Of a stretch of DNA of 46,988 nucleotides, positions 2,818 to 42,897 are shown one piece after another. Made by a program: the position numbers and the translations under genes. Below the pieces are notes generated by a model. That model was given only the letters and a program-made list of their open reading frames with translations, had not been told where the DNA came from and made no database searches. Position 1 is the first letter of the stretch. Each line of letters starts with the position of its first letter. This DNA is from Octopus sinensis (Eukaryota), in assembly GCF_006345805.1 (NCBI RefSeq), contig NW_021834642.1, positions 1 through 46,988 on the forward strand, read 5' to 3'.

Positions 2818-3357
2818 AACTCTTATAAATATAACTAGAATAAAATGCATACACACGGGTATATATGTGTGCGTATTTACATGTATGCAGGGTGGAAAGT
2901 ATTTGTGAGGACACATGTGAATGCGCGTCTATCCACCTGTTTATCAGTTCTATAACAACACGCAGCCCGGTCCGGGATTCGAACTCACAACCTCACGATC
3001 GTAAACTCGACGCTCTAACCACTAAGCCATGCGCCTTCACAACTCTTATAAATATACATACACACAGGTATATATGTGTGCGTATTTGCACGTATGCAGG
3101 GTGGGAAGTTTTTGTGAGGACACATGTGAATGCGCGTCTATCCACCTGTTTGTCAGTTCTATAACAACACGCAGCCCGGTCCGGGATTCGAACTCACAAC
3201 CTCACGATCGTAAACTCGACGCTCTAACCACTGAGCCATGCGCCTTCACAACTCTTAAAGATATAACTAGAACAAAATACATACACACAGGTATATATGT
3301 GTGCGTATTTGCATGTATGCAGGGCGGGAAGTATTTGTGATGCACCTGTTTGTCAGT
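2732..3357. repeat. Tandem triplication (~210-220 bp unit) of SINE head, TSD and flank
   Basis: cgcagcccggtccgggattcgaactcacaacctcacgatcg recurs at ~2738, ~2960 and ~3170, each followed by the same flank. Confidence 0.95.
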
Positions 3358-5122: not shown

Positions 5123-5300
<178 letters not shown>

Positions 5301-5302
5301 AT

Positions 5303-6281
5303 GTTTCTTTATTAGCCACACAGGGCTGCACACAGATAGAACAAATTACAAGGTAGAGCTTTTCTTTTGAGGTTTAAAAAAAAAAAAAATAAAAAATAAA
5401 AAAAAATAAAAAATAAGAAAAAAATAAAATAAAATAAAAATAAAATAAAAAAGGGGGGGTCGATCAAAAGGGATCGTAAAAGGAGAGAAAGAGGACAAAA
5501 AAAAAAAAAAGGGGGGGTTAAAAAAAAGGGGGAGAGGAAAAAAAATTGATCAATAGGGATCGTTATCACAGAAATGTCAATATGAAGTGTAAAGGGGGGG
5601 ACAGGTGAGGTTTACCCGTGGAAAGAAAAGCCTACGGAAAAGACCACGGTAACCTCGGTCAATGAAGTCACATGTTATATTTCTTTTTTTTTTTTTTTTT
5701 GCAAATAAGCAACTCTCTGATTAATTTTTACGGTTCATAGAATCATAGTCAAGGTGGCTTCGTCATTCATACGTGCCATTCTGCTACATTCACCCATCTT
5801 TTTTTAAACCTCACTAACAAAACTTGCCTCTCTACTCTCACTTTTTTCTTCAAGTGATACTTGAAGAAGTTGATGAGATTGACCAGAGAGGAAAGTGTTT
5901 GTCTCTAATCCTTTCAGACGCGTCCACCAGATACATTCTTTCGCCATAGCCACAAGTATGATAAAATAGCTCTTCCTTCCGTTGGAAGGAAGGAGGCGTG
6001 ACGATATTAACGATAGACTCGGCTGATAAACCGACACGTCCACACGTGACAGCAGTCGTTCGACATAAGCCCACAGGTGGGAAATTGCTGGACACTGCAC
6101 GATTGCGTGCAGAGCGGTTTCGTCGCTCTGCCCGCATCTCGGGCAGTCGGCCCCGTGTTTCTCGAGCCATGCCTATAGAGCTTATCTCGAACGGGTAGCG
6201 CTTCTCGGTAGCACCGCCAGGCCAGGGATCTCTGGAAGTTGTCCATAGGTCCCGGGCCGAAAGTCGTTTGAAACAGGCGAG
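5303..6281 (-). mobile_element. 5'-truncated L1/Tx1-clade LINE, copy 1 (ORF2 C-terminus and 3' UTR)
   Basis: Minus frames give FQTTFGPGPMDNFQRSLAWRCYREALPVRDKLYRHGS and QCPAISHLWAYVERLLSRV...MAKECIWWTRLKGLETNTFLSGQS, homologous to the C-terminus of the long copy. Confidence 0.92.
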
Positions 6282-6283
6282 AC

Positions 6284-6361
<78 letters not shown>

Positions 6362-6490
6362 GCAGAGAGGGAGATACGGAGAGGGAGATTCAGAGAGTGA
6401 TAGTCAGACAGAGAGACAAATAGAGATAGAGAGACAGACAGAGACTCACGGGTAGACAGACAGACAGACAGACACACAGTCAAGCGAGCT

Positions 6491-6569
<79 letters not shown>

Positions 6570-9970: not shown

Positions 9971-10032
<62 letters not shown>

Positions 10033-10033
10033 T

Positions 10034-10080
<47 letters not shown>
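9971..10080. repeat. (GATA)n array, 3' flank of Tx1 copy 2
   Basis: Direct reading. Confidence 0.95.
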
Positions 10081-10081
<1 letters not shown>

Positions 10082-10379
10082 CTTTTTTATTGTAGCCACA
10101 CAGGGCTAAACACAGAATAAAAATGGACGAAATACAATGTAGAATTTTTTTCTTTTCGAGGTGGGATGGGTGGGGCACAAAAAAAAAAAGAAAAAACGTT
10201 CGATCAATAGGGATCTGTGGGTTGTGTGGTGTATAAAAAAGCAATATATATATATAAAGTTCACAGTTTAGGTGTAGCCTTGGAAAGAAAAACCTACAAA
10301 AAAGACCAAGGTCACCTCAGACAGTTCGAAAATGAACACATGAGTAAGTCACCTTACCTCTCGTTGTCTCTTTTGGTTA

Positions 10380-13300
10380 CAGATTCACGCTTAAAATAGA
10401 ATCGTCTTTCATACTGACCATTTTTGCCACTTTTACTCACTTTTTATTAAAACATTCGTTCGACAAAGCCTTCCTCTCTATTCTCATCCTCCTTTTCAAG
10501 TGGTACTTGAAAAAGTTGACGAGAGACTGACCAGAGAGGAAGGTGTTTGTTTGCAGTCCTTTCAAACGCGTCCACCACACACATTCTTTCGCCATAGCCA
10601 TCAGCGTATCGAAAACCGTTTTCCCTTCCCGTTTAAAAGAAGGTGGTGGAACAATATTCACGATAGACTCGGCCGATAAGCGGGCCCGTCCTACACGCGA
10701 CAACAGCTGTTCGACGAAGGTCCACAGCTCTGAAATATCTGGACACTGCACGAGTGCGTGCAGAACGGTGATCTGGCAGAAACGTTAGGACGTCGGGCGA
10801 AATGTTTAGCGGTATTTCGTCTGTCTTTACGTTCTGAGTTCAAATTCCGCCGAGGTCGACTTTGCCTTTCATCCTTTCGGGGTCGATTAAATAAGTACCA
10901 GTTACGCACTGGGGTCGATATAATCGACTAAATCCCTTTGTCTGTCCTTGTTTGTCCCCTCTATGTTTAGCCCCTTGTGGGCAGTAAAAAAATAGGTTTC
11001 GTCGCTCTGACCGCATCTCGGGCAGGTCGGTCCGGTGATGGTTTTCGAACCGTGCCTGTAGCTCTTCTCTCGAACAGGTAGTGCGTCTCGATAGCATTGC
11101 CAAGCCATGGATTTCTGGAAGTTATCCATAGGCCCCGGCCTAAACGTCGTCCTGAATAGGCGAGTTAGGAATTTCTCGTCGACTCCCAGGTTTGCCCCGA
11201 GTGTGTCGTCGGACCTCCCCTCCACTAGTCCTCTATAGAACGCTTTAGTCGTTTGTAAGTTGCACAAGTTTGACACCGGTCGGCAGAGCTGCTGTAGAGC
11301 TTGGCGACACTCTCAGTGCCAATCGCCCAGTTTCGGTCTCTTCTTGATCCACGTTTGCAGTTCGGTCAGTGAGACGAGCTGCGGGAAGGCGCGCCTCACA
11401 AACGGCGCCCACACCTGTTCACCGTTATCGATGAAGTTCCAGAGATGTCGCAGTCTCAGCGCATGCCTGCGCATCATCAACCACGGCATGCCCAGTCCTC
11501 CATTCAACGGATGTTGACAGCAAATGGACTTCCTCACCATCGGAACGACACCCTTCCACAGGAAGCGGAAGAGTATGCGCTCCAGTTTGGTGATGGTGGC
11601 GTGAGGACAAGGCACGACGGTCAGGCGGTAATCGATGACGGATGCAATGTACGCGTTCGCCACCTCCGCCCGACCTTTTATAGACAGCTTTCTCTCGGCC
11701 CATGTTTGGCTGAGAGCGACCACTCTACTCGTGATCTCGTCCCAGTTCTTATCCATTTGGAGGTCCGGACTGAACCAGACCCAGAGCAATTTAACCGGTC
11801 CGTCCGTCCAGCGTCCCACTACTGAGCCGCAGTCGGACGGCATGGGCTTACCTCTCTAGGTGCCGAGTAGCAAACCCACTGACTTTTCCGGGTTAATCTT
11901 CGCTCCCGCCACCGTTTCGTATTTTCTTAGTGTCTCGCCTATCATCTGGATGTGTTTGTCTCTCGACACTATGACGGTGACATCCTCTGCATATGCCGAC
12001 ACGCTCGTTCCGCAACCCAGTTCCCGTGGGATGCCCCTCAGTGTCGCCAGCTTCCGTAGTAGCGGCTCGAGAGTCAATACATACAGAAGCGCCGACAGGG
12101 GACACCCCTGACGGACCGAACGCGTGATGTCAAAAGGTTTCGACAGGTGGCCGTTCACCCGAATCACCGATCGGATGCCGCTATACAAGGCAGCGATCCA
12201 ACCGCGGAAGACGGGACCGAAGCCAGCCGCCCTGAGGACGGACGCCAGGTACCGATGGTCGACCCTATCGAAGGCTTTAGACTGATCCAAATTTATCAGC
12301 GCCCCACCCATGCCAGGATCCTTAACTACCCTGTCCACAATGTAGCGCATCAGATGGAGGTTGTCATGTATGGTTCTGCCTGGCACGGCGTATGTTTGCG
12401 CCCTGTCGACCAGTTTACCAATGACAAGCGCCAATCTCTCGGCTATTACTTTGGCCAAAATTTTCAAATCTGCGTTGAGCAGAGTGATGGGCCTGAAATT
12501 ATTTATAAAATTCCCCTTGTTTTGGTCTTTCTTCAGCAACGTCACTGCACCTCGGTTCACGAAACCGGGGATTCTCCCGTTTTGTTGCCAGTTGCAGTAG
12601 ACTGATGCCAAGAGGTCGCCAAACAAGTCTGGCATTTGACAATACAGCTCGTAGGGTAAACCATCCAATCCAGGCGACTTATCCCTCGCGCAGCCCGCCA
12701 TCGCATCCCGCACGTCAGCGGCTGTGATGGGACTTTCACAACACTCCGCTTCTCTTGCCGAGAGCCGCGGCGGGTCGGTCAGGTAGGCACTGAAATCCAT
12801 CCCGCGTTCCGACCCACCACTCGCACCAAACATTCGAGCAAAGTGCTGTTGAAAGACCTCACACATCCTTTCGGGTTCGAGTAAACTGCATCCCTGTTGA
12901 TCTATTAGAGACCGAATGGTGGCTCTGTTGCCACGCTGCGCCTGCGCTACCCGGGCCTCTCGCGCAGCTTCGATCCCTTCGTTCTTTAAGGCACGCATTT
13001 TAGCTCTGACGACGTAACCCTCGTGCTTGGCGTTGAGGTGTTGGTCGAGGGCCATCCTCGCAACCAGCACGCTGGTTGCGCTGCCAGTGGTAAGTGCCTC
13101 TTCTAGTTTCTTAACCAGGTCTCCCTCTACTCTATTTCGATCTATCGCTAATTCCTTGCTAAACCTAATTGATTCCGATTTTATTGCCATTTTCAGGGCG
13201 AACCACCAGCGGTTGTTAACGACGGCTCCTGTCAGCGCCCTCTTAATTAACTCGCTAATCCGGTTCCTGTAAACCTGTCGCGCTAAGAGCGACGTGATCA

Positions 13301-14046
13301 GTTTCCAGTAACCGGGACACTGTCTATGTGTCTTATCTAAGTCGGGCGTACACGTCACAAATTTGTGATCTGTGTAGCTGACTATTTTAAATTGTGGATA
13401 TCCTACACTATCCCTATCCGCTGTCCTGCATAGAATTCTATCTAGATAAGATCTCGACGATCCGACGCGGTTTGTCCAAGTCCACGTTGGCACGTTCGGA
13501 TGGTCGAGTCGGAACCTGTCAGACAAATGGAAATGTCTGAGTAGGTCTTTGAAGCACTTACACCCCCCTTCTATTCCTATCCATTCCCACATAATCTAGA
13601 TGCGTGTCCAAGGTAGCGTTCCAATCCTCTACTAACAGTAAAGGTTTAGACGTAACCAGGAAAACCTCTAGACGTCTGAAGAAATCCGCCCGACCCGCTA
13701 AGGACGGTGCATAAACTGCCATCAGATGGAATGCACACCCATTTCTTCCATCCACGTCCAAGACAACCAGCCTACCCTCCGGGTCTAGGAATATTGTTCT
13801 TACTTTTACATTTAGACTCTTTCGAAAAAGCACCGCGGTACCTCCACCACTCATGTTCGGCAAACAAGGAGAAAAATAAATGTCGAATTGATCGCCAAAC
13901 ATGGACGCGAGGGCCCGCGGCTTGCTGAGTCTGGTTTCACTGATAGCTACTATATCCACGTTCAGTGACTTGATGTCGTTTAGAAGGTAACCTTGCTTCC
14001 AAGCCGACGCCAAGCCACGCGCATTCACACAACCTAATTTAAGCAT
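10380..14046 (-). pseudogene. Tx1 ORF2 (APE endonuclease, reverse transcriptase, CCHC), disrupted
   Basis: APE motifs NARGL, SETRL, VYAP, EDWN (normally GDFN), SYLDR, TDH. RT motifs KSPGLDGLP, FRPITLLNADLKILAKV, LDQSKAFDRVDH, VRQGCPLS, YAED (normally YADD). C-terminal CPRCGQSDETVLHALVQC. Lesions: frameshift ~13570, in-frame stops at 11856 and 11313, SINE insertion at ~10770. Confidence 0.95.
10770..10994 (+). mobile_element. SINE family D inserted antisense into Tx1 ORF2
   Basis: Absent at the homologous positions of copies 1 and 3 (cggttt...cgctctg); flanked by GGT at 10767-10769 and 10995-10997; homologous to 19656-19882 and 26185-26407. Confidence 0.92.
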
Positions 14047-14134
14047 AATTGACGTTTAAGAAATTTGTGTTTCACACACTACATTGGAAGAGACAAGAGG
14101 CAAGAGGGAAGGTCACTTACTCATTTCGAAAGTT

Positions 14135-16079
14135 TCAGTTTTTTCTTCTTCTTTTGTAGTGTCTTTGAGGAGGTGTTTGTATAGTTTTTTTGAGAGGTAT
14201 CGTTGAAACCCGCCTACCGCATTTGGAAATATTGTTTTCAGTGTATGGTGTTGTGTTTGCGTTATGTGTACAATTCTTATGTGTTTCGGTGGTGTGTCTT
14301 AAAGTCATCTTCACAGATGTTCGTGTTGGATGCAATGTAATCCATTAAGTTTTTTATTGTCTGTGTCTATTGCAGTTAGCTGTGTGTGTGTGGTTTTGCG
14401 GGTTCATTGATGTTTTTGATTGTCTAAGGAGATGCTGTCCGGAGTTAAAAATCTCCCTGCTTTACTTACTTGTTTGGTGGGCTTTTTTGATCTTTTCCTT
14501 TTACCCCCTGTGGCTATTTGCCATTCCGTCGAACTTTCGTCGTTGGACGATGAGTCCGACGAATCAGAAGGGGGTAAAGGCAAAGCGTTTGCGTTAATAT
14601 GTATGCTTGTAGAAATTGTTGATGTTTTGTGCGGTGTTTGTGTTGTTGGGGTGTTAGGGGTAGAATTTGTCTCCTCGTCACTGTTTTCTGTTTGTTTAGT
14701 TGTCGTCCTCGGTGTTGGTGTTGGTCTATATTTTGTTGGTTCAGTATGTTGAATTGGTTGCGACGTGAACGGTGATTGTGTTGGTGCTGTTTCTTTTCTT
14801 GGTGATGTTGTTGGTGTTTGTTTGCTGGTTTGTTGTTTTTCTTGGCATTGTTCCATAATTGAGTGTGTTGGTGTTGGTGTTGGCAACAAGGGTTTTTAAA
14901 TTTTTTTTCTGTTTTGTTCTTTCTTGTTTTTTCTGTGCCAGAGCGCACTTGGCAATTAAATGTTCTGGGCTGCCACAGTTGTAGCATCTGGGCTTTTTGC
15001 CTTCTGCTAAATGGATCCTATCAGGTAGGTTCTCGATAGAGGACCCCTCAACCTGGATGGTCACTACTATTGTTTTACCACCCCAATTGTCGTTTTTGTA
15101 CACGGCGATTTCTAATATGTTTATCGTTTTCAAATGGTAACAGATCGCTCCTGTTATCCATTTGTTAGGTATCTCGGGAGGTACATTTTAATGCTAATTC
15201 TACTCACTCTCTGGCCTTTGTAATATGGGATCGTGATGATTTCATCATTTTCCAAAGACTCCGTAGAGTGAGCTTTTGCCACTTCCTGGTTAGGGAAGCG
15301 GACCACCACTGTATTAAACTGGGGACCCCAGTTTATATATTCTTTTTTTCATTATGTTTTTTAAACACATTTCTATGTCCTTTTTTGTAATCTGTTCATT
15401 TTGTTTTTTGTTTTGTTTTTTATAATTTTATATATAATTGTCTTATTTTCTATTTGTTCCTTTATGTGTTGAGGTCTATGCAGCACTAAATCCTGCCCTT
15501 GGGTTGTAAAGAGTGCTCTCGTTTCTATTAATTCTTCATTCGTAAATTTTATCATTTCTTTTTTCTGACGCAGGGCGTCAGCGAAATTTACTGTTATATT
15601 TTGGCAGTTGTTGTTGTTGTGTGTTTTTGTTGTTGTTGTATCCGAAATATTCTTGGACGTGGCTTTTCCAGGTGCCGTTGATTCTCTTATGTTAATATCT
15701 TCACTATTAGATGGTAAAATATTTATTTCATTTTTGTTGTTGTTCTTCTTGTTGTTGTTTTTGTTAATAGTATTCGCGTGAATTTCATTTTTATCATTTA
15801 TGTTGGTCGTAGTGGTGGTGGTGGTGGTGGTGTAGGTTGTGATGGTAGCAGTAGTAGTCTCGTTGTTGTTGTTGTTGTTAGTGGTGGTGGTGGTGGTGGT
15901 GGTGGGACAGGGCTGTTACCGCAAGTGGTTGCAACGTTCACTACCACGTCACTCAGGTTTGTCTTTGTCGAATGTGTGTGCGTGCATAAGTTCTTTTTTT
16001 CTCCTAGCGTTTCAAGTCTGGGAAAATGCTGGTCCATAAAGGAACGCGACCAGCGTTCTACAATAACATTTCTCGACAT
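14135..16079 (-). pseudogene. Tx1 ORF1 (Gag-like), frameshifted
   Basis: CYNCGSPEHLIAKC (CX2CX4HX4C) at ~14945-14986, upstream FADALRQKK...VVVRFPNQEVAK, and a Thr/Pro/Ser-rich C-terminus. The start position is uncertain. Confidence 0.75.
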
Positions 16080-16308
16080 TTTTTAACGTCGAGAAGAAAA
16101 ATATACAAATTAAATAGGGTTGAAACTGCCCCTAGGGGCGAATTCCTCCCTTGGAAAAGCACTCAAACGAAAGTTGGGTGCCTTACACACCTTATTTACA
16201 AAAATGTACACAAAATATGGGCTATAAATAGTCAAAATAAACGATTACCTTCGGAGCCGATGTGACAACACGTCTGTCGATAGATAGATAGATACATACA
16301 TACATACA

Positions 16309-19503: not shown

Positions 19504-19655
19504 TACATACATATCCCTATTCAAAAGCATTTCAGGCATGCTACTCTGTCTTTTTGTTTATATATCCTGAGCTGATCACTTACCCCGTGAAACCTTTCTT
19601 GTCTTCATACGCTAGGCTATAGTTTGAATGTAAATTATGGTTTGGCTACTATTCT

Positions 19656-19882
19656 TATTTCTTTACTGCCCACAAGGGGCTACACACAGAGGGGACAAAC
19701 AAGGACAGACAAACGGATTAAATCGATTATATCGACCCAGTACGTAACTGGTACTTATTTAATCGACCCCGAAAGGATGAAAGGCAAAGTCGACCTCGGC
19801 GGAATTTGAACTCAGAGCGTAGCGACAGACGAAATACTGCTATGCATTTCGCCCGGCGTGCTAACGTTTCTGCCAGCTCGCC
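19656..19882 (-). mobile_element. SINE family D, full length
   Basis: Head ggcgagctggcagaaacgttag...gagttcaaattcc (A/B-box-like); tail ...tagccccttgtgggcagtaaagaaata. Confidence 0.9.
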
Positions 19883-20639
19883 ACCCTTTTTTTGGGGGGT
19901 GCTACTATCTATCAGGCTACTATTGGCTACTATTCTATCAGGTACAGATACCACGAAGGAACCACCTTGATATTTTGATCACACCTTATGATCGTTGAAT
20001 GAGAATAGAGGGATTTAACGTACAATAAACTAGCTTCCAATCCCAGGATATATCAGATTTGTTTCTCTTTTGTTGTTAGTGGCTCTTTAGAAGACGGAGA
20101 CATGTATTAGTCTCCTAGAGATATGGCTGTTCGTTGCAAGAATTAGCGTTAACTAAGTTAAACAGAATTACTTGGCTAGAAACGCCAGCAGCACTATCTA
20201 CATAAGTGTCGTCTTTAATACGTATTAAACAACTGCTGACAGCATTGTAGAATCGGAGACACGGCAACCAATCAGCTCAATAGATTGTGTGGAGGATGAC
20301 ATTAGTTGAATCATACGTTATCTCCGCTCTAGGGTGTCTTTCTTTTCATTTTTCCAGTTTAGCAACTTCACAAAGAAATGGCAGAAGAAAAGATATAAGA
20401 TTGGGAAAGAAAGGACAAAGAAGAAGAAAAAAGAGATCTAATAGGAGAGAAAAGGAAAGGAAGGAAAATAGGAAGAGTGAAGAGATAGTGGTTAAAAGAG
20501 AAGAGAGAGAGAATGCTAGGAACGGGGCTGGAAGAAAAGATAGAGGTAGATAGAAAAGAAGATGGTCGATGGGGGAAGACAACATGATAGAAGCTGTGGC
20601 GAAAATTGAGTCGTAAGAGATGATATATATATATATATG

Positions 20640-22419: not shown

Positions 22420-22452
<33 letters not shown>

Positions 22453-22453
22453 T

Positions 22454-22494
<41 letters not shown>

Positions 22495-22547
22495 GAGACA
22501 GACAGAGACAGAGAGACAGAGAGAGATAGAGAGAGAGAGAGTGAGAG

Positions 22548-22586
<39 letters not shown>

Positions 22587-22598
22587 TAGATAGATAGC

Positions 22599-22634
<36 letters not shown>

Positions 22635-22642
22635 CAGACAGC

Positions 22643-22722
<80 letters not shown>

Positions 22723-22740
22723 AAGACAGACAAAAAGATA
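22420..22740. repeat. (GATA)n/(GACA)n/(GA)n array with no LINE insertion
   Basis: Direct reading. Confidence 0.95.
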
Positions 22741-22855
22741 CATACATACACATAACATATACATATGTATGAATATATATGCATACATATACATATATAT
22801 ATATATATATATATACACGCATATGTATAGATATGTATATATATATGTATGCATA

Positions 22856-24635: not shown

Positions 24636-24840
24636 TGTGTATCAGTGTTTGTCCCCACCATCGCTTGACAACTGATATTGGTGTGTTTACGTTCCCGTAA
24701 CCTAACGGTTCGACATAAGAGACCGATTGAATAAGTACTAGGCTTACAGCGAGTCCTGGGGTCGATTTGCTCGACTTAATGGTGATGCTCCAGCATGGCC
24801 ACAGTCAAATAACTGAAACAAATAAAAGAATAAAAGAATT
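24630..24840 (+). mobile_element. SINE family AB, 3' half
   Basis: gtgtttgtcccca...ggggtcgatttgctcgac...cagcatggccacagtcaaat...aaaagaataaaag. Confidence 0.85.
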
Positions 24841-25998: not shown

Positions 25999-26407
25999 AT
26001 TTCTTTATTGCCCACAGGAGCTAAACATAGAAGGGACAAACAAAGACAGACAATGGGATTAAGTCGATTACATCGACCCCAGTGTGTAACTGGTACTTAA
26101 TTTAATCGACCCCGAGAGGATGAAAGGCAAAGTCGACCTCGGCGGAATTTGAAATCAGAACGTAGCGGCAGACGAAATACCTATTTCTTTACTACCCACA
26201 AGGGGCTAAACACAGAGAGGACAAACAAAGACAGACAAACGGATTAAGTCGATTATATCGACCCCAGTGCGTAACTGGTACGTATTTAATCGACCCCGAA
26301 AGGATGAAAGGCAAAGTCGACCTCGGCGGAATTTGAACTCAGAACGTAGCGACAGACGAAATTCCGCTAAGCATTTCGCCCGGCGTGCTAACGGTTCTGC
26401 CAGCTCA
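25999..26407 (-). mobile_element. Two tandem SINE D copies (one full, one lacking ~40 nt of head)
   Basis: The body gtcgacctcggcggaatttga occurs at ~26133 and ~26318; the junction on minus reads aaagaaata-ggtatttcgtc. Confidence 0.9.
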
Positions 26408-27559
26408 TCCACCACAGCATGACCATCCCAGGCCGTATTGACATCACTCCAAGAAAACAATAAGCCCAGTGTGACCAGATCGACAGCAGCTGCAACAGCA
26501 ACATCTCCACCACCAGCATCACCACATCCTCGATGCGGAGTATATGGCAGTTGGTATTTGTAGAATAACGAGTACCACTTCTACTGTGTTCGGAACACAG
26601 CAGCAGTAGAAATATGTACAGCAGTAATAAGATCTTTGTAAAAGGTGATTGTGCAAGAGCTGCAAGAAAAATTGAGAAGGTCATTCAAGAAGAAAATAAG
26701 AGAGGCCATTACGCTCAACCTGAGAGAGTAGTCTCAGTTGCCCAGTGCTTATGATGCAGACGGCTAAGATAGTGTTATGGTGCAATGCGGTATTTCTTAC
26801 TCGCACAAGGGAATATAGGATGTCGTAGTTAATATTCTCACAGAAGTCGACGTTCAAAGGAATTCGACTGTCTTGTGGAGTAATTAGGATTCCACTCTTG
26901 TTTCGGCTGATGAGTATCGAATGCTAAGGTAGAGATGAACCGGTACGATTGAATATCCGGTGAATAGCAGTTTGTGTTGTCTTGGAGAAAGAAAACACAA
27001 TTCTTCATGTGAAGCAGTGTCGCAAGAAAAACTGGTTGACGATGTTGTTTCGATCCTGATGAATCAAAACATACTTGACAAAATCGCCTTACAAGATTGA
27101 TTCTCCAAAGAAGATAACATTTTACATTATGACTGAGAGTAAAAGAACCAGATGGCACCCAAGAGCCTACCGTCCTTGGTAGAAGCCAAGGTACCAAAGA
27201 ACCACATTACAGTTGATGCTAAACATCAACAAAAATACTAATACCAGTAGTAGCTTGCAAAGCAGTGGCTAAATCAATAGCGGAGACAGAAAAATTGTTA
27301 GGTATATCACTGCCACCAGCAAAAAAGAAATACTCATAGCAGTTCCACCTCAAGTGGGCAAAAGCACAAATACGCACCAACACGTACACATGCGCAGATG
27401 TGTTTCTGTTCTCTTCCCCGGACTACGACCCCTATTCCAACTCTTCGTCAAGCGACGAATTAGAAGACAATGCGAAACAATGCTAAGTTTTAGCCTCACC
27501 GTACATCTGGAGGGTAGAGGTGGTATTGCCTGAACAGTATAAATCTTCCTAATGCTGTA

Positions 27560-30025: not shown

Positions 30026-30831
30026 GTTGTTAGAATGTTGGACAGACCGCTTTTCATTGACTGTTCTGGCTCTTTACATTTTGAATTCAAATCCGATTGA
30101 AGCTAACTGTCCTCCTTTCGAGTTCGATTAAAAAGAGTACCAGTCCTGTACAGAGATCGATACTTCTCTTTTACACACTCTTTATTTTCCTCACTTTCTG
30201 TTTCTCCTTTCTCTCTCTTTCTCTCTTTCTCTCTCTGTTTCCCCCACCTCTGTCTCTTTCTGAAACAAATCGTGAATGGACATGAAAAGGGAAGGGCACT
30301 GCCAAATCTAAGAATAGTTCTCAAGACACGCCCTATGTCAGACAGCGCATCTCGAAGTACAAATTGTTGCTTGTGCACGCAAGGGAAGAAATGTTTAAAA
30401 TATTCTCTGTCGATATTATAATACTTGGTCCTTAGGTTATGCAGAGCTCGCATATGCTGCTCCATTGCCTGTATTTGCTGGCCTTAGCTATAATTTCATT
30501 CCTTTTTAAGGACATCTAGGATATAAAAGCCACCACAGATGCCCATAGCGATAGCAAATTGCTCATCTCCGTTCTTTTTAATGCCATATGAAATATCATG
30601 AAGTAATGATTTCAGCATTTCTCACTAGAGAGGCCTTTAGCCAACAGGTCTTGGGATCTGATGATACACCATAAAGCTACGCCCTTTATGGACGGGAAAC
30701 TTAAGATAATCCCATAAATCTGACCTTATCTAACTTTAATATATATTGCTCTTTAACTTTGAGTGTGCTTCTTTTTTCGGATTTATATTTACGGACGATT
30801 TATATATATATACATTTACATATATATATAT

Positions 30832-31584: not shown

Positions 31585-32625
31585 GCCCATAAATTAAGTA
31601 CCAGTGAAACACTGGAGTCGATGTAATCGACTAGTCCCTTCCCCCAAAATTGCGGGCCTTTTGCCTTTTGTATAAAGGATTATTAACATTGGTAGTTCAC
31701 TGGTAAAATCGGTAGAGCGTCGGACAAAAGGCATTACTGTGTTTCATCTGATCCATTGTGTTCTGAGTTCAAATTCTGCCGAGATTTACCCTGCCTTTCC
31801 TCCTTTTTGATTCGATAAGATAAAGAACTAGTTTAACTCTACGGTGGATACAATCGTCTGACCCCTACACCTCAAAATTACTGATCTTGCACCGAAATTA
31901 CCAAATATTATTAATATAGGTTTCTAAGTTAGGTACTAGGGCAGCAATATTGAGAGCATAGTGTCAGTTTATAACATACCTGAACTAGACTGGCCCTTTA
32001 TTTTATCGATCTCGGATGGAAGAATGAAAGGCAAATATGACTTCGGCAAGATTTGAACTCACAAGTTAAAGACCAGAAACAAATGCCGAAAAGTATCCAA
32101 CGCTCTAACGTTTCTGCCAAACTACTGATGATGAGCAAGTGCTTGACACATTGACACATGTAGTTTTGAAGGGAAGGGTTAGTCGATTACATCAGCCCCG
32201 TACTCGTCTGCTACTTTATTTTATCGACCCCGAAAGGATGAAAGGTAAAGTTTAGCTTGGTGGCATTTGAACTCAGAACGTAAAGAACCGAAAGAAATGG
32301 CGCTGAGCATTTTGTCCAGCGTGCTAACGATTCTAACTAGTACTTAATTTATCGACCTTGAAAGGATGAAGGGCAAAGTCGACCTCGGCGGAATTTGATG
32401 TTAGAACGTAAAGACAGACGAAATACCGTTCAGCATTTCGCCCGGTGTGGTAACAATTCTGCCAGTTGGCTGTCTTAACAACGATGAATAGTTCTTTTTA
32501 ATTTTGACACAAGGTTAGCAATTTTAGGGGTAGGGTTCAGTCGATTACATTCCTCTAGAACTAGACCTTCATTTTATCGACCACAAAAGAATAAAAGGTA
32601 GAGTCGACCTCTACGCGATTTGAAC
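31585..32625. mobile_element. Cluster of ~5-6 decayed SINE D-related copies in both orientations
   Basis: Recurrent ttatcgacc(c)cgaaaggatgaa.ggcaaagtcgac and gagttcaaatt variants. Confidence 0.75.
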
Positions 32626-32629
32626 TTAT

Positions 32630-33045
32630 ATTCTCTTTTACTCTCTTTTATTTGTGTCAGTCACTTGACTACGGCCATGCTGAAGCACCGTCTTTAGTCG
32701 AGCAAATCGACCTCAGGACTTATTCTTTGTAAGCCTAGTATTTATTCTACCGGTCTCTTTTGCCGAACCGCTAGGTTACGGGGACATAAACACACCAGCA
32801 TCGGTTGTCAAGCAATGTTAGTGGGACAAACACAGACACACAAACATACACACGCTCATATATATATATATATACATATATACAACGGGCTTCTTTCAGT
32901 TTCTGTCTACCAAATCGACTCACAAGGCTTTGGTCGGCCCAAGGCTATAGTAGAAAACACTTGCCCAAGATTCCACGCAGTGGGACTGAGCCCGGAACCA
33001 TAAGGTGGTTAGCAAGCTACTTACCACATAGCCACTCCTGTGCCT
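32630..33045 (-). mobile_element. SINE family AB, complete
   Basis: Head ~33045-32880, internal (TA)/(TG) tract, tail ending (aaaagag)n at 32630. Confidence 0.88.
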
Positions 33046-34141: not shown

Positions 34142-36599
34142 TCAACTGCAGCTTAGATATATATATATTCATAAATACATATGTATACATATTTATATAT
34201 AACACTTATAGCGGGACTTGATTTCAATTTGAATTGATTCAAATGTTTACTGATACCAATAGAAGGTAATATGAGGAAATATTAAATCAGAGGCAGATAT
34301 CATAGCTGAAACGACCAGATATTCTAAATCTGACAAAATATCAATGAGAACTGGTCCTATTTAAGCTTCAATTGAGAATTAGATAACTAGCAGTTGTCGA
34401 TGTCGTCGTTATTGTTGTGGATGCTGTTGTAGTCGTCGTGGGTGTTGTTGTTGTTGTTGTTGTAGTTGATAATGTTATTTAATCACAAGTAGGCCCTGAT
34501 CGATCAATTGATCAGATCTATGATCTAAGTCATTCAAAGTGCCTCTTTTTTCTTTCGGATGAGTGTAACCTTGATGGGTGACATTTTTTTCCATTGTAGA
34601 GTGTGCTTTAAGAGAGATTTCGTTTCTATTTCTAGAAGGAGAAATTTCCCTCAGTAGCTCTTTAACAAGAAGTATTTCAACAAGACTTGCTTTTAATAGC
34701 AGCTATGACTTCAATAAAATAATTTATTTTCTAAATAAAGCACAAAGCAATTTCCTTAACAGATAAAAGTGAGTGTAAGTTGGCAGTTGAATCAATCGCA
34801 TATATTACTGGTATGTATTGTTTCGATATCGACTTTCGAAGTGAAACAATAGGTTTCATTTCATTTAAAACATACAATATTTCAAACATAGAATGTGAAT
34901 TAAACAAAAGACCATAAATTTAGCAATAAATGAACGAGAATAAAAGGAACAACGAAAGAGATTTAAAATAGCAGAGGAGATGAGGACATCAGATTAGTGT
35001 TATACAACAGACGAGATTTGAAGACATCAAACGATATTTAAACAATAAATGAATTTAAGCAATAATAAATTTAAGCGAGATGCAAGAATTAAGCAGAGGA
35101 AATTGAAACAACTAAAGTTAATAGATAATCAAACATCAGCCGAGATTTAATCAACAGATGGGATTTGAATAAGTAATGAGGTTTCAACAATGGAAGAATT
35201 TGTTTACACCCAGTGGTCCGTTTAATGAGTACAGCTTAATTGGCTATTAAGTGTATTCGACAATCTCAAAACTTGAGATATTTGACTTGCTACATAGCTC
35301 CATTGAAAACTGTCAGCAAAAGAGCCAGTGAGATGGAAAAATAATTTTCATGCGTCTATACATGTGTGTGAAAAAGTGAGATATATTGGTGTGAAAAAGA
35401 AACACCTAACGTTTCTCATTGAAGCCATCACACTTTTCAAATGAATGGACTTGTTCGAAGCGTTAAATTTTCAGCCTGTGGCAAATCAACATACGTCACT
35501 TTTCGCTTTCTACTCTGACTAGAAGGTTTTCACACATAAATCTCAAAAACATGGTCGAATTCTTCTGAAACACAGTGTTACACAACATAAAATTGACCAT
35601 TAATCGAATATTTGTCTGTTGATTGAAATATCGGTCAGTATTAGAGACCATACAACGTGATCGATAATAATATTGTTAGAGCCCAGAAAACAAAATGGCT
35701 GGCGGAATTTGAGTAAAAGTTTTGATTTCAAATCCCGCTGCGGTCGGACATTACATTTGTTCCTTCCTGAATCGATAAAATAAATAACAGTCAAATACAG
35801 AGATCGATACGCAACGTCATATCTAAGTTAAAAACAATATTAACACCCCTCAAAACAAATACTAAATTTAGAAATCAATATTTGTTCAAAACTTCAGTTT
35901 TGTTATTCATGTTCTTGTAATTTTGACAAAAGCTTGCCTTGATCGTGCCTGCACTACTGTGATGTTTGCTTGTATATTTATGATAGGTTTGGTTGCTATC
36001 TCTAGAAGATTGATCGGCAATTTAGATCAGTGCTAGCTAATCTCGACTCTCGAGTCCTCTACAAGACCAAAATGGTAGTGGTGGAGGTTGATGAACCTCG
36101 TTCAAAATTGTGAAAAGCTGCTATGAAACCCGGTATAACTATTCAGATATTTATGTCTTTCTGTTGAGAGATAATACTGGAAAAACGAAGTTTAGTTGGT
36201 TAATAAAATTAGCTCATTGAGTAGAACGACCTCTCAAAACCTGGGGTCCGTACGAAAATTAATTCATAACAAGGGGTCCTATATAGTGAAAAACTTGGAA
36301 TCATTCTCTCAGTATCTCGAAAATAACACCGGGTGTTGAACCCGGGCAGCCATGTTGATAGGCAGGTAATTTTTGGTATTACATTATTGTTGCTGTTGTT
36401 TGTTTGTTTGTTTTATCTCTGTTTAGTTCTGATTACAAAGTACTTATACTCAAAGCTACTCCAACCGTGACCACTCTATCTCTTTCCCTGACCGAAGACA
36501 CATCATCCAGCACAAAGGCACACACAGAAGCACATGCACACACACACACACACATACACGCGCGCTCATACATGCGCGCACATACACACACGCACACAC

Positions 36600-37964: not shown

Positions 37965-38169
37965 AATTATTCTCTTTTACTCTTTCACTCTTTTAATTGT
38001 TTCAGTTATTTCATTGTGGCCATGCTGGAGCACCGCCTTTAGTCGAGCAAATCAACCCCAGGACTTATTTTTTATAAGCCTAGTACTTTTTCTATTGGTC
38101 TCTTTTGCCCAACCGCTACGTTGCGGGGATGTATATATATATACTGAAAGAAGGCCATCGTATATATGT

Positions 38170-41001: not shown

Positions 41002-41022
<21 letters not shown>

Positions 41023-41097
<75 letters not shown>

Positions 41098-41111: not shown

Positions 41112-42456
41112 AAGTTTCTTTATTGGCCACACAGGGCTGCACACAGATGGGACAAGTTACAAGGTAGAGCTTTTCTTTTAGGGGATGAAAAAAAAGGGGG
41201 CGGCGTAGGTTTTCGATCAAGAGGGATCGTAAAAGGGAAGAAAAGAACAAAAAAAAGAAAAAAAGAAAAAAAATAGAATAAAAAATAAAAATAATAAAAG
41301 AAAAAAAAAGAAAGGGAAAGGAACAAAAGAAAAGAGAAATGAAAAAAGAAGAAAAAGGGGAAAAAAGGGGAAGAGGAAAAAAAAGAACGATCATAGGGAT
41401 CGTGTATCACCGTGTTATGATATTGGTGTAAGGGGAAAGCAAGTAAGGTTTATCCGTAGGAAGAAAAGCCTACGAAAAGACCACCGTAACCTTGGTCAAT
41501 ATTGTTATATGTTACCACCACATTTGTTTGCAAGTGGGTAACCCTCTGTTTTCAATTTCTGGTTTCATAGATTATGCTCAAGTGGCTTCGTCATTCATAC
41601 GTGCCATCCTTGCTACATTCACCCATCTTTTTTTAAAACATTCGCTAGACAAAACTTGCTCTCTACTCTCACTTTCCTTTTCAAGTGGTACTTGAAGAAG
41701 TTGATGAGAGATTGACCAGAGAGGAAATGTTTGTCCTCCAATCCTTTCAGACGCGTCCACCAGATACATTCTTTCGCCATAGCCACAAGGATGATGAAAA
41801 TAGTCTTCCTTCCCGTTTGAAGGAAGAAGGCGTGACAATATTGACGATAGACTCACTGATAAACCGACTCGTCCCACACGTGACAGCAGTTGTTCGAGTC
41901 ACAAGCCCACAGGTCGGAAATTGTTGGACACTGCACGATTGCGTGCCGAACGGTTTCTTCGCTCTGACCGCATTTCGGGCAGGTCGGCCCCGTGTTTCTC
42001 GAGCCGTGGTCTGTAGAGCTTATCCCGAACGGGTAGCGCTTCTCGGTAACACTGCCAGCCAGGGATCTCTGGAAGTTGTCCATGGGCCCTGGCCGAAAGT
42101 CGTCCTGAACAGGCGGGTCAGGTACTCCTCGTCGACGTCCAGGTTCGCCCCGAGCTCGTCGTCGTACCTCCCCTCCACTAATCCCCTATAGAATGCTTTG
42201 GTTGTGTTGAAGTCACTCAAGGTCGACCCAGGACGGCAGAGTTGCTTGAGAGCAACGCGACACTCGCGGTGCCATCGCCCTTCCTCGGCCTCTTTTTGAT
42301 CCACGACTGCAGTTCGGTCATGGAGACGAGCTGCGGGAAAGCGTGCCTCACAAACGGCGACCACACCTGTTCACCGTCGTCTACATAGAGCCAGAGATGT
42401 CGCAGTCTCAGCGCGTGTCTGCGCATCATCAACCACGGCATGCCCAGCCCTCCTTT
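41112..42456 (-). mobile_element. 5'-truncated L1/Tx1-clade LINE, copy 3
   Basis: GGLGMPWLMMRRHALRLRHLW...TGPTCPKCGQSEETVRHAIVQCP; the 3' UTR resembles copy 1 more than copy 2. Confidence 0.93.
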
Positions 42457-42487
42457 TGGTAGATAGATAGAGAGATAGATAGATAGA

Positions 42488-42897
42488 TTCTTCTTTTATT
42501 CGTTTCAGTCATTTGACTGCGGCCATGATAGAGCACCGCCTTTAGTCGAGCAAATCGATCCCAGGACTTATTTTTTGTAAGCCTAGTACTTATTCTATTG
42601 GTTTCTTTTTGCCGAACCAATAAGTTAAGGGGACATGAACACACCAATATCGGTTATCAAGCGATGATGGGAGACAAACACAGACGCACACATACACACA
42701 CACACACACGTGCGTGTGTGTGTGTGTGTGTGTACATGACAGGCTTCTTTTATTTTCTGTCTACCAAATCCATTCACAAGGATTTAGTCGGCCCGAGGCT
42801 ATAATAGAAGACACTTGCCCAAGGTGCCACCCAGTGGGACTGAACCCAGAACAATGTGGTTGCTAAGCAAGCTACTTACCACACAGCCACTCCTGTT
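42488..42897 (-). mobile_element. SINE family AB, complete
   Basis: Homologous to the other AB copies. Confidence 0.88.

What the first reader, a model, noticed from the sequence alone, without database searches (positions are those of the whole stretch)
19658..19698. SINE D carries the 3' tail of the Tx1 LINE (putative SINE-LINE pair)
Seen: the SINE tail ttgtcccctctgtgtgtagccccttgtgggcagtaaagaaa (19658-19698, minus) matches the Tx1 copy 3 terminus ttgtcccatctgtgtgcagccctgtgtggccaataaagaaa (41115-41155, minus) at 35 of 41 positions. The same tail is in SINE copies near 10952, 26000 and 26185. Both keep a small stem-loop with different stem bases: AGCC-ctgtgt-GGCT in LINE copies 1 and 2, GCCC-cttgt-GGGC in the SINE. 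Established: shared 3' tails mark SINEs mobilised by 'stringent' LINEs, whereas mammalian L1 relies on poly(A). Inference: SINE D is mobilised by this Tx1 lineage through a 3' stem-loop.
Basis: partly seen in the sequence, partly recalled or inferred. Interest (0 to 1): 0.75.

Follow-up and report, generated by a model that had tools for sequence, protein, structure and literature searches.

The report
Octopod SINE with L1/Tx1-like LINE tail
A short mobile element in this octopod genome ends in the same roughly 50-base, hairpin-bearing tail as a long L1/Tx1-type mobile element nearby, so the long element's lineage most likely copies the short one; this is a new example of a textbook arrangement.

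Summary
SINE D's tail (19658-19698, minus) matches the 3' end of LINE copy 3 (41115-41155, minus) at 35 of 41 positions, where chance predicts no match. The same tail ends three more SINE D copies and two more LINE copies.

The LINE has an ORF1 with a CCHC knuckle and an ORF2 with endonuclease, reverse transcriptase and zf-RVT domains. Its closest solved structure is human L1 ORF2p. Placement in the Tx1 clade was not tested by phylogeny.

Its closest relatives are cephalopod elements. In Argonauta hians, the same tail ends both LINEs and two SINE families. A full-length Argonauta LINE and four SINEs share 13-17 bp target duplications that start (C)TATT. Each SINE tail is closest to a LINE tail from its own genome.

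A 3-4 bp hairpin, usually with a CTTGT loop, is present in all 24 tails examined. It persists across LINE subfamilies whose synonymous sites are saturated. Covariation and folding-energy support for it are weak.

One complication: all three window LINE copies sit inside (TATC)n microsatellites in one orientation, and SINE D copies do not. The actual driver is therefore probably a sister subfamily that inserts at scattered sites.

Verdict: a real SINE-LINE pair at lineage level, a new member of a known kind, and moderately interesting.

The parts
19656..19886 (-). SINE D, full-length copy (231 nt). It has a head with a B-box-like motif GAGTTCAAATTCC, a core shared with other SINE families, and a LINE-derived tail.
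   Evidence: Neither ARAGORN nor the Rfam tRNA model recognises the head.
19656..19707 (-). LINE-derived tail of SINE D, about 50 nt (CCTTGTTTGTCCCCTCTGTGTGTAGCCCCTTGTGGGCAGTAAAGAAATA). It contains the finding's 41 nt.
   Evidence: blastn SINE positions 197-243 vs 41164-41115, 82%. SINE D and the SINE family at 31.7-32.6 kb diverge just upstream of this segment.
19668..19680 (-). Hairpin GCCC-CTTGT-GGGC in the SINE D tail.
19642..19655 (-). Target-site duplication AGAATAGTAGCCAA of SINE D, 3' copy. The 5' copy is at 19923-19936. Between the 5' copy and the SINE head lie 36 extra nt (19887-19922).
26182..26413 (-). SINE D copy 2, full length.
25999..26181 (-). SINE D copy 3, 5'-truncated. It abuts the tail of copy 2 directly (junction GAAATA|GGTATTTCG).
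   Evidence: (184-bp tandem).
10763..10994 (+). SINE D copy 4, inserted antisense into the C-terminal coding region of LINE copy 2. Its TSD is at most 2 bp.
41115..42457 (-). LINE copy 3, 5'-truncated, ORF2 C-terminus plus 3'UTR. The tail is at 41115-41164 and the hairpin at 41125-41138.
41002..41097 (-). (TATC)24 array directly 3' of LINE copy 3. A short (TCTA)n tract at 42458-42487 lies on its 5' side.
10081..16278 (-). LINE copy 2, near full length (about 5.97 kb without the SINE). ORF1 CCHC knuckle around 14741-15133, endonuclease 13561-14055, RT 11856-13595, hairpin 10094-10107. It is flanked by (TATC)n at 9971-10080 and 16279-16294.
5304..6281 (-). LINE copy 1, 5'-truncated. Tail 5304-5356, hairpin 5314-5327. 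It is flanked by (TATC)n at 5124-5301 and 6280-6569.

Best explanation
SINE D is a short retroposon of about 231 nt, presumably transcribed by RNA polymerase III. Its last ~50 nt were copied from the 3' end of an octopod L1-superfamily LINE lineage with Tx1-like features.

Inferred mechanism: the LINE's ORF2 protein (endonuclease plus reverse transcriptase) binds this tail in trans. The tail consists of a small G+C-rich hairpin, usually with a CUUGU loop, flanked by UCUGUGU on one side and A(A/G)UAAAGAAA on the other. The protein nicks the target and primes reverse transcription at the tail, which produces TSDs of about 13-17 bp.

Shown here: the tail homology, its position at the terminus of both elements, its conservation in the LINE lineage despite saturated synonymous divergence, its use by SINEs in two octopod lineages, and, in Argonauta, a TSD length and (C)TATT target motif shared between a LINE and SINEs.

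Inferred: that the hairpin is the recognition determinant, and that the driver in the window's genome is a dispersed-inserting sister subfamily rather than the three (TATC)n-embedded copies seen here.
For: - Tail match: 35/41 identities, E = 3.6e-8, no matches in shuffles.
- The tail is integral to the LINE. It ends all three window copies. Copy 2 differs from copies 1 and 3 with dN/dS 0.26-0.28 and dS 0.4-1.5, so these are distinct subfamilies that diverged while active. The hairpin core AGCCCTGTGTGGCT is nevertheless identical in all three.
- The same tail ends three Argonauta hians LINE copies and the related LINE on L006. Homologous GGC-CTYGT-GCC hairpins end the more distant LINEs on L004 and L005.
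- Argonauta has two SINE families with this tail.
- The full-length Argonauta LINE (L002 6886-12650) has a 17-bp TSD, TATTTTTAAAATTTGTA. Four Argonauta SINEs have 13-17 bp TSDs. All five TSDs start (C)TATT.
- Species-matched best hits: SINE D's best LINE tail is window copy 3 (41/50). Argonauta SINE A's best is the Argonauta L002 LINE (43/55). SINE D versus SINE A is only 36/52.
- Hairpin: at least 3 bp in 24 of 24 tails and 4 bp in 16 of 24. RNAalifold returns it as the only consensus helix. 88.6% of cells are paired, against 6-50% when the partner is slid.
- AATAAA is intact in 9 of 9 LINE tails but in only 2 of 15 SINE tails. This fits a poly(A) signal that only the Pol II-transcribed LINE needs.
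- A SINE D copy sits inside LINE copy 2, so SINE D was still active after that LINE inserted.
- Literature: shared tails define stringent SINE-LINE pairs, and Tx1 elements are known to mobilise SINEs (PMC4494074, PMC4824008).
Against: - All three window LINE copies lie in (TATC)n arrays, and no SINE D copy does.
- SINE D ends ...GAAATA followed by GG or AG. The window LINEs end ...GAAAC(A/T)TATC, and their loops differ (CTGTGT vs CTTGT).
- Only one of four SINE D copies shows a clear TSD, and it does not start with TATT.
- Covariation in the hairpin comes down to one lineage event: G-C to C-G relative to the Argonauta and L006 tails, or a register shift relative to the window LINEs. The RNAalifold covariation term is about 0, and 22-30 of 500 shuffles reach the observed measures.
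- Single-sequence folds have z-scores from -1.0 to +1.2.
- No tRNA-like head was detected by ARAGORN or Rfam.
- The LINE repertoire of the source genome outside this window was not available.
Confidence: 0.7

Rival explanations
1. The three (TATC)n-embedded LINE subfamilies seen in the window are themselves the drivers of SINE D. On this view the protein accepts any template with the tail, and where an element lands depends on the template's 3' end rather than on the protein.
For: SINE D's best tail match is window LINE copy 3 (41/50). About 20 nt of degenerate TATC-like sequence after GAAAC is shared by copies 1 and 3, so TATC repeats belong to the LINE transcript. The related LINE on L006 ends in (ATT)n instead.
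Against: There is no direct evidence. Loop and terminus differ between SINE D and these copies. In Argonauta, the LINE closest to the SINE tails is the dispersed one, not the TATC-embedded ones.
Confidence: 0.2
2. The tail is a relic. SINE D once took its tail from this LINE lineage, but a different LINE clade amplified it, using only a few terminal bases or another part of the SINE.
For: Octopus genomes hold active RTE, CR1 and Dong-R4 LINEs as well as L1-Tx1 (PMC13282606). SINE D's TSD and target data in the window are thin.
Against: The tail lies at the extreme 3' end of all four copies, which differ pairwise by 7-10% (K2P), and keeps the hairpin in each. In Argonauta, SINEs with this tail share TSD length and target motif with the tail-donor LINE. 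SINE tails track the LINE tails of their own genome.
Confidence: 0.07
3. The direction is reversed or the junction is chimeric: the LINE copies end in a captured SINE fragment rather than the SINE carrying a LINE tail.
For: Homology alone does not give a direction.
Against: The tail ends every LINE copy examined, across subfamilies with saturated dS, across species, and in the distant LINEs on L004 and L005, where no SINE D-like copy was detected in the ~16 kb held for each locus. The homology stops at the SINE's body-tail boundary, where sister SINE families carry a different tail.
Confidence: 0.02
4. The similarity is chance or low-complexity sequence.
For: None.
Against: No matches occur in 100 shuffles, the blastn E-value is 3.6e-8, and the tail recurs in a second genus.
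Confidence: 0.01

Closest known systems
UnaL2 / UnaSINE1 of the eel (stringent-type SINE-LINE pair; Kajikawa & Okada 2002, cited in PMC4494074 and PMC4824008)
   Same: The SINE and LINE share a short 3' tail that contains a conserved stem-loop. The LINE's 3' end carries short tandem repeats.
   Different: UnaL2 belongs to the L2 clade, whereas this LINE belongs to the L1 superfamily. The hairpin here is only 3-4 bp. The SINE lacks the LINE's terminal (TATC)n repeats. No functional assay exists for this pair.
SINEU / Tx1-Mar of crocodilians (PMC4494074)
   Same: SINEs mobilised by Tx1-type LINEs. In Argonauta, a target preference shared between SINE and LINE is used as evidence, as it was for SINEU.
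   Different: SINEU has snRNA-derived heads, and its link to the LINE was argued mainly from a shared transposon target. Here the link is a shared 3' tail. In the window itself, the SINE and LINE targets differ.
Kibi and Koshi, microsatellite-specific Tx1 LINEs of teleosts ((TC)n and (TTC)n; Kojima & Fujiwara 2004, cited in PMC4494074)
   Same: LINE copies flanked on both sides by a single microsatellite in a fixed orientation.
   Different: The target here is (TATC)n and the host is an octopod. A close relative ends in (ATT)n, and another inserts at dispersed sites with ordinary TSDs. Any relationship to Kibi or Koshi was not tested.
Known cephalopod SINEs: OK, OR1 and OR2 of octopus (Ohshima & Okada 1994) and Ceph-SINEs with RTE-like tails (PMC5786205)
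   Same: Abundant SINEs with a modular head, core and tail in cephalopods.
   Different: Ceph-SINE tails are RTE-like, not L1/Tx1-like.
Stringent L1 lineages of plants (PMC3472496)
   Same: L1-superfamily LINEs that recognise a specific 3' sequence rather than poly(A) and share it with SINEs.
   Different: A different kingdom and a different tail. Those elements are not associated with microsatellites.

Membership tests
SINE-LINE pair with a shared 3' tail (stringent type) | The 3' terminal sequence of the SINE is homologous to the 3' terminal sequence of a LINE in the same genome | tested here: met
   35/41 ungapped and about 41/50 gapped; E = 3.6e-8; the tail is terminal in both elements
SINE-LINE pair with a shared 3' tail (stringent type) | The SINE has an internal Pol III promoter or a small-RNA-derived head | tested here: inconclusive
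   A B-box-like motif GAGTTCAAATTCC is present by eye. ARAGORN finds no tRNA and Rfam gives no tRNA hit at E up to 10
SINE-LINE pair with a shared 3' tail (stringent type) | SINE copies are dispersed, flanked by TSDs and often 5'-truncated | tested here: met
   Four copies at three loci; a 14-bp TSD at 19642-19655 / 19923-19936; one 5'-truncated copy. TSDs were not found for the other copies
SINE-LINE pair with a shared 3' tail (stringent type) | SINE and LINE share insertion-site features (the same endonuclease) | tested here: inconclusive
   Met in Argonauta: 5 of 5 TSDs are 13-17 bp and start (C)TATT. Not met in the window: the LINEs lie in (TATC)n arrays and SINE D does not
SINE-LINE pair with a shared 3' tail (stringent type) | The LINE proteins mobilise the SINE in trans, and this depends on the tail | not testable with these tools
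   Needs a retrotransposition assay
Tx1 clade of the L1 superfamily | ORF2 with an APE-type endonuclease, RT and a C-terminal zinc-binding domain; ORF1 with a CCHC knuckle | tested here: met
   Pfam Exo_endo_phos, RVT_1, zf-RVT and zf-CCHC. The closest solved structure is human L1 ORF2p at 1e-33, against R2 at 1e-18
Tx1 clade of the L1 superfamily | The RT domain groups with Tx1 reference elements in a phylogeny | not tested
   No named Tx1 reference sequences could be obtained with these tools. The only named homologues are from Argonauta hians and Acanthosepion pharaonis; most hits are unnamed ENA or JGI contigs. L1-Tx1 is the only L1-superfamily class listed for octopus (PMC13282606)
Tx1 clade of the L1 superfamily | Sequence-specific insertion (common in the clade but not universal) | tested here: met
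   5 of 6 octopod LINE copies lie in (TATC)n arrays, all in one orientation and one junction phase
Microsatellite-specific LINE (Kibi/Koshi-like) | Both flanks of the copies are the same microsatellite, including at 5'-truncated copies | tested here: met
   Copies 1, 2 and 3 in the window. In L003, LINEs lie head to tail and are separated by (TATC)n
UnaL2-type stem-loop recognition | A stem-loop in the tail that is conserved and supported by covariation | tested here: inconclusive
   Present in 24 of 24 tails, with the loop CTTGT in 15 of 24. Covariation score 0.236 vs 0.177 in shuffles (22 of 500 reach it), resting on one double change in one lineage. Energy z-scores are not significant

The most novel reading that the evidence does not exclude
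One L1/Tx1-like protein machinery serves templates whose 3' ends decide where they land. LINE RNAs ending in (UAUC)n home to (TATC)n arrays. A sister LINE ending in (AUU)n sits at an (ATT)n array. LINE and SINE RNAs ending in only ...AUC(UAU) insert at scattered (C)TATT sites. On this reading, target choice is guided by base-pairing of the RNA's 3' end with the nicked target rather than fixed by the endonuclease, and SINEs escaped the microsatellite niche by dropping the repeat.
Probability: 0.2. Interest if true: 0.65.

Novelty: new member of a known kind. Interest (0 to 1): 0.4.

Why it matters
SINEs are the largest repeat class in Octopus genomes. The newest O. vulgaris annotation puts SINE elements at 11.6% of the genome, and among recently active insertions it lists 893 SINE families as unclassified; it names no LINE partner (PMC13282606, PMC8967140).

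If SINE D and its relatives ride on an L1/Tx1-like lineage, that names a driver for at least part of the octopod-specific SINE expansion. It would add a stringent, tail-recognising animal member of the L1 superfamily. It would also offer a natural set of near-identical tails with different terminal repeats ((TATC)n, (ATT)n, none) for testing how the 3' end of a template sets the insertion site.

The concept itself (shared tails, Tx1-driven SINEs, microsatellite-specific Tx1 elements) is established.

Tried and rejected
- ARAGORN and Rfam (E up to 10) on the SINE head returned no tRNA or other meaningful family.
- Pfam scans of ten other long ORFs in the window gave no hits; these ORFs are translated simple repeats.
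- tblastn with L1/Tx1-like ORFs found no further LINE copies in the window. Other LINE clades could not be screened because no references were available.
- Folding energies of single tails are no better than shuffles, so thermodynamic support for the hairpin was dropped.
- A longer helix (UUCU/AGAA and UGU/AUA around the hairpin) appears in several folds. Its columns are invariant, so it is not claimed.
- A search of full-text papers for sequence strings from SINE D and its tail found only unrelated papers.
- The papers read on cephalopod and mollusc SINEs do not describe this pair.
- Two metagenome DNA scans for the tail returned 0 hits and one chance hit in a soil contig, L007.
- L001 carries too little 3'UTR to show a tail. 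The look-up of P0123 found no record.
- The dN/dS estimate for copy 1 vs copy 3 double-counted overlapping HSPs and was discarded.
- I considered whether the LINE's (TATC)n is only a self-made 3' tail. I rejected this because both 5'-truncated copies also have the repeat on their 5' side and no upstream LINE tail is present.
- The third homology search and the remaining contig look-ups were not spent. The window's own species is not in the protein collection: no hit to the window's RT ORF exceeded 70% identity.

Full report
**1. The observation**

On the minus strand, 19658-19698 reads TTGTCCCCTCTGTGTGTAGCCCCTTGTGGGCAGTAAAGAAA and 41115-41155 reads TTGTCCCATCTGTGTGCAGCCCTGTGTGGCCAATAAAGAAA. 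They agree at 35 of 41 positions without gaps.

- blastn extends the match to about 50 nt at 82% identity, E = 3.6e-8 for the window.
- With up to 3 mismatches, the SINE version recurs at 10952-10992(+) and 26184-26224(-), and the LINE version recurs at 5304-5344(-). Shuffled sequence gives no matches.
- A looser motif scan adds the 5'-truncated SINE copy at 26000-26022(-) and the third LINE terminus at 10085-10106(-).

**2. The two elements**

SINE D is about 231 nt long. Its copies are at 19656-19886(-), 26182-26413(-), 25999-26181(-; 5'-truncated and abutting the previous copy) and 10763-10994(+).
- Pairwise K2P distances between copies are 0.07-0.10.
- The head has a B-box-like motif, but neither ARAGORN nor Rfam recognises a tRNA.
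- Head and core are shared with another SINE family clustered at 31.7-32.6 kb. That family diverges from SINE D just upstream of the last ~59 nt and ends in a different tail. The tail is therefore a separate module.

The LINE is present three times, always on the minus strand.
- Copy 2 (10081-16278) is near full length. It has an ORF1 with a CCHC knuckle and an ORF2 with Exo_endo_phos, RVT_1 and zf-RVT domains.
- Copies 1 (5304-6281) and 3 (41115-42457) are 5'-truncated.
- The closest solved structure is human L1 ORF2p (1e-33), against R2 at 1e-18.
- The closest homologues that carry a species name are from Argonauta hians (51-68% identity), and Acanthosepion pharaonis is also named. The window is therefore from an octopod genome.
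- I could not run an RT phylogeny against named Tx1 references. "Tx1" is consistent with the data but not demonstrated.

**3. The tail belongs to the LINE and is under constraint**

- The three window copies are only 77-81% identical to each other.
- Copy 2 differs from copies 1 and 3 with dN/dS 0.26-0.28 and dS 0.4-1.5, so these are distinct subfamilies that diverged while active.
- Most of the 3'UTR cannot be aligned between them. The hairpin core AGCCCTGTGTGGCT is nevertheless identical in all three.
- The same tail (GGCCCTTGTGGCTAATAAAGAAA) ends three LINE copies in Argonauta hians (L002, L003) and the related LINE on L006.
- More distant LINEs, at 44-54% protein identity (L004, L005), end in a homologous GGC-CTYGT-GCC hairpin followed by a second hairpin with compensatory changes: GTAC/GTAC versus GTAT/ATAC.
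- This rules out the idea that the LINE copies merely captured a SINE fragment.

**4. Corroboration in a second genus**

- Argonauta locus L002 carries six copies of a SINE homologous to SINE D (about 72% identity over core and tail). It also carries five copies of a second short element with a different body. All eleven end in GGCCCTTGTGGCYAATAGAGAAATC(TAT).
- A full-length LINE (L002 6886-12650) has an intact 476-aa ORF1 and an ORF2 that is open apart from a single interruption. It is flanked by a 17-bp TSD, TATTTTTAAAATTTGTA, and is not in a microsatellite.
- Four SINE copies have TSDs of 13-17 bp. All five TSDs begin (C)TATT, which is also visible in the 5' copy of each TSD. This points to one shared endonuclease and priming system.
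- In global alignments of the last ~50 nt, SINE D's best LINE match is window copy 3 (41/50). Argonauta SINE A's best match is the Argonauta L002 LINE (43/55). The two SINE tails match each other at only 36/52. SINE tails therefore track LINE tails of their own genome.

**5. The hairpin**

- In a hand-registered table of 24 tails, all keep at least 3 bp and 16 keep 4 bp. The loop is CTTGT in 15.
- The stems observed are GGCC/GGCT, GGCC/GGCC, AGCC/GGCT, AGCT/GGCT, GCCC/GGGC, GCCC/GGGT, GCTC/GGGC and GGC/GCC.
- RNAalifold returns this hairpin as the only consensus helix, at -3.6 kcal/mol with a covariation term of about 0.
- On alignment A3, 88.6% of cells pair, against 84.8% in shuffles (30 of 500 reach the observed value) and 6-50% when the partner is slid. 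The covariation score is 0.236 against 0.177 (22 of 500).
- The only change on both sides of a pair (G-C to C-G) is in SINE D, which is one lineage. Relative to the window LINEs, it can equally be read as a one-base register shift.
- Single folds are no better than shuffles, with z-scores from -1.0 to +1.2.
- The hairpin is therefore conserved and plausible as a recognition element, but that role is unproven.
- The AATAAA hexamer is intact in 9 of 9 LINE tails but in only 2 of 15 SINE tails. This fits a poly(A) signal needed by the LINE alone.
- The LINE-SINE homology starts downstream of the last long T run in the LINE 3'UTR, as a Pol III-transcribed element would require.

**6. The complication: microsatellite residence**

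- All three window LINE copies have (TATC)n directly 3' of the tail, in the same orientation and junction phase (...N|TATC). They also have TATC repeats on their 5' side, including both 5'-truncated copies.
- In Argonauta L003, LINEs lie head to tail and are separated by (TATC)n.
- These subfamilies therefore insert into (TATC)n arrays, as the Tx1 elements Kibi and Koshi do with (TC)n and (TTC)n (PMC4494074).
- About 20 nt of degenerate TATC-like sequence after GAAAC is shared by copies 1 and 3, so repeats are part of the LINE transcript.
- The LINE on L006 ends in (ATT)n instead.
- SINE D copies are not in TATC arrays. They end ...GAAATA followed by GG or AG. Only one shows a clear TSD (AGAATAGTAGCCAA), and it has 36 extra nt at its 5' junction.
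- In the window's genome, the most likely driver is therefore a dispersed-inserting sister subfamily like the Argonauta L002 LINE, which was not sampled here. The alternative is that the template's 3' end, not the protein, sets the target. I give that reading a probability of about 0.2.

**7. Age**

- A SINE D copy interrupts LINE copy 2, so SINE D was active after that insertion.
- The LINE lineage predates the split between Argonauta and the window's species, and it has a nearly intact, TSD-flanked copy in Argonauta.
- L1-Tx1 families are among the recently active LINEs of O. vulgaris (PMC13282606).
- Overlapping activity is therefore plausible but was not measured.

**8. Comparison and verdict**

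This works like a stringent SINE-LINE pair of the UnaL2/UnaSINE1 type, in an L1-superfamily lineage with Tx1-like behaviour. Three things are already known: SINEs driven by Tx1 elements (SINEU/Tx1-Mar), microsatellite-specific Tx1 elements (Kibi, Koshi), and stringent L1 lineages in plants (PMC4494074, PMC3472496). I found no description of this octopod pair in the searchable literature, but Repbase and Dfam could not be consulted. The finding is real and is a new member of a known kind. Interest is moderate (0.4), because it names a candidate driver for part of the octopod SINE expansion.

Noticed in passing
window 5124-5301, 6280-6569, 9971-10080, 16279-16294, 41002-41097, 42458-42487: Every LINE copy in the window is embedded in a (TATC)n microsatellite, in the same orientation and junction phase. 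This indicates (TATC)n-specific insertion. One large array, at 22420-22748, carries no LINE.
   Followed up: yes
window 25999-26413: Two SINE D units lie in tandem. The downstream unit is 5'-truncated at about position 49 of the 231-nt element and starts exactly at the end of the upstream unit's tail (GAAATA|GGTATTTCG). This suggests template switching or insertion at a SINE tail. No common TSD was found.
   Followed up: partly
window 19887-19922: 36 extra nt (TAGTAGCCTGATAGATAGTAGCACCCCCCAAAAAAA) lie between the 5' TSD and the SINE D head. They partly repeat the target and include GATAGATAG.
   Followed up: no
window 31700-32640 (also 30107-30162, 35723-35809): A cluster of older SINE copies shares SINE D's head and core but ends in a different tail (...CCCTAAAATTGCT[GA][GA]CCTTGTG[CT]CAAAATT...). 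Its CCTTGTG motif resembles the GGC-CTTGT-GCC hairpin at the 3' end of the more distant LINEs on L004 and L005. This may be a second SINE-LINE tail pairing.
   Followed up: partly
window 42488-42800, 32644-32946, 24636-24833, 37989-38129 and others: A further abundant repeat of about 310 nt has an internal (CA)n/(TG)n tract, a hairpin CAGTCA-AA-TGACTG and an end ...AATAAAAGA. The copy at 42488-42800 runs straight into the short (TCTA)n tract that holds LINE copy 3.
   Followed up: partly
L006 1990-2105: A LINE 67% identical in ORF2 to the Argonauta LINE has the same hairpin tail, but an (ATT)n microsatellite follows it rather than (TATC)n.
   Followed up: partly
L003 9758-19074: Argonauta LINEs lie head to tail and are separated by (TATC)n. 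The 165 nt after the second array repeat the 5' end of the second LINE at 98.8% identity.
   Followed up: partly
protein P0123: A protein labelled as coming from a Herbaspirillum sp. metagenome-assembled genome is 61% identical to the cephalopod LINE ORF2. This is probably host DNA contaminating a bacterial bin.
   Followed up: no
window 2839-3340: A 209-bp unit is repeated 2.3 times at 90% identity. It was not characterised.
   Followed up: no
tails listed: The AATAAA hexamer is kept in all 9 LINE tails. In the SINE tails it is changed to AGTAAA, AATAGA, GATGGA and similar forms.
   Followed up: partly
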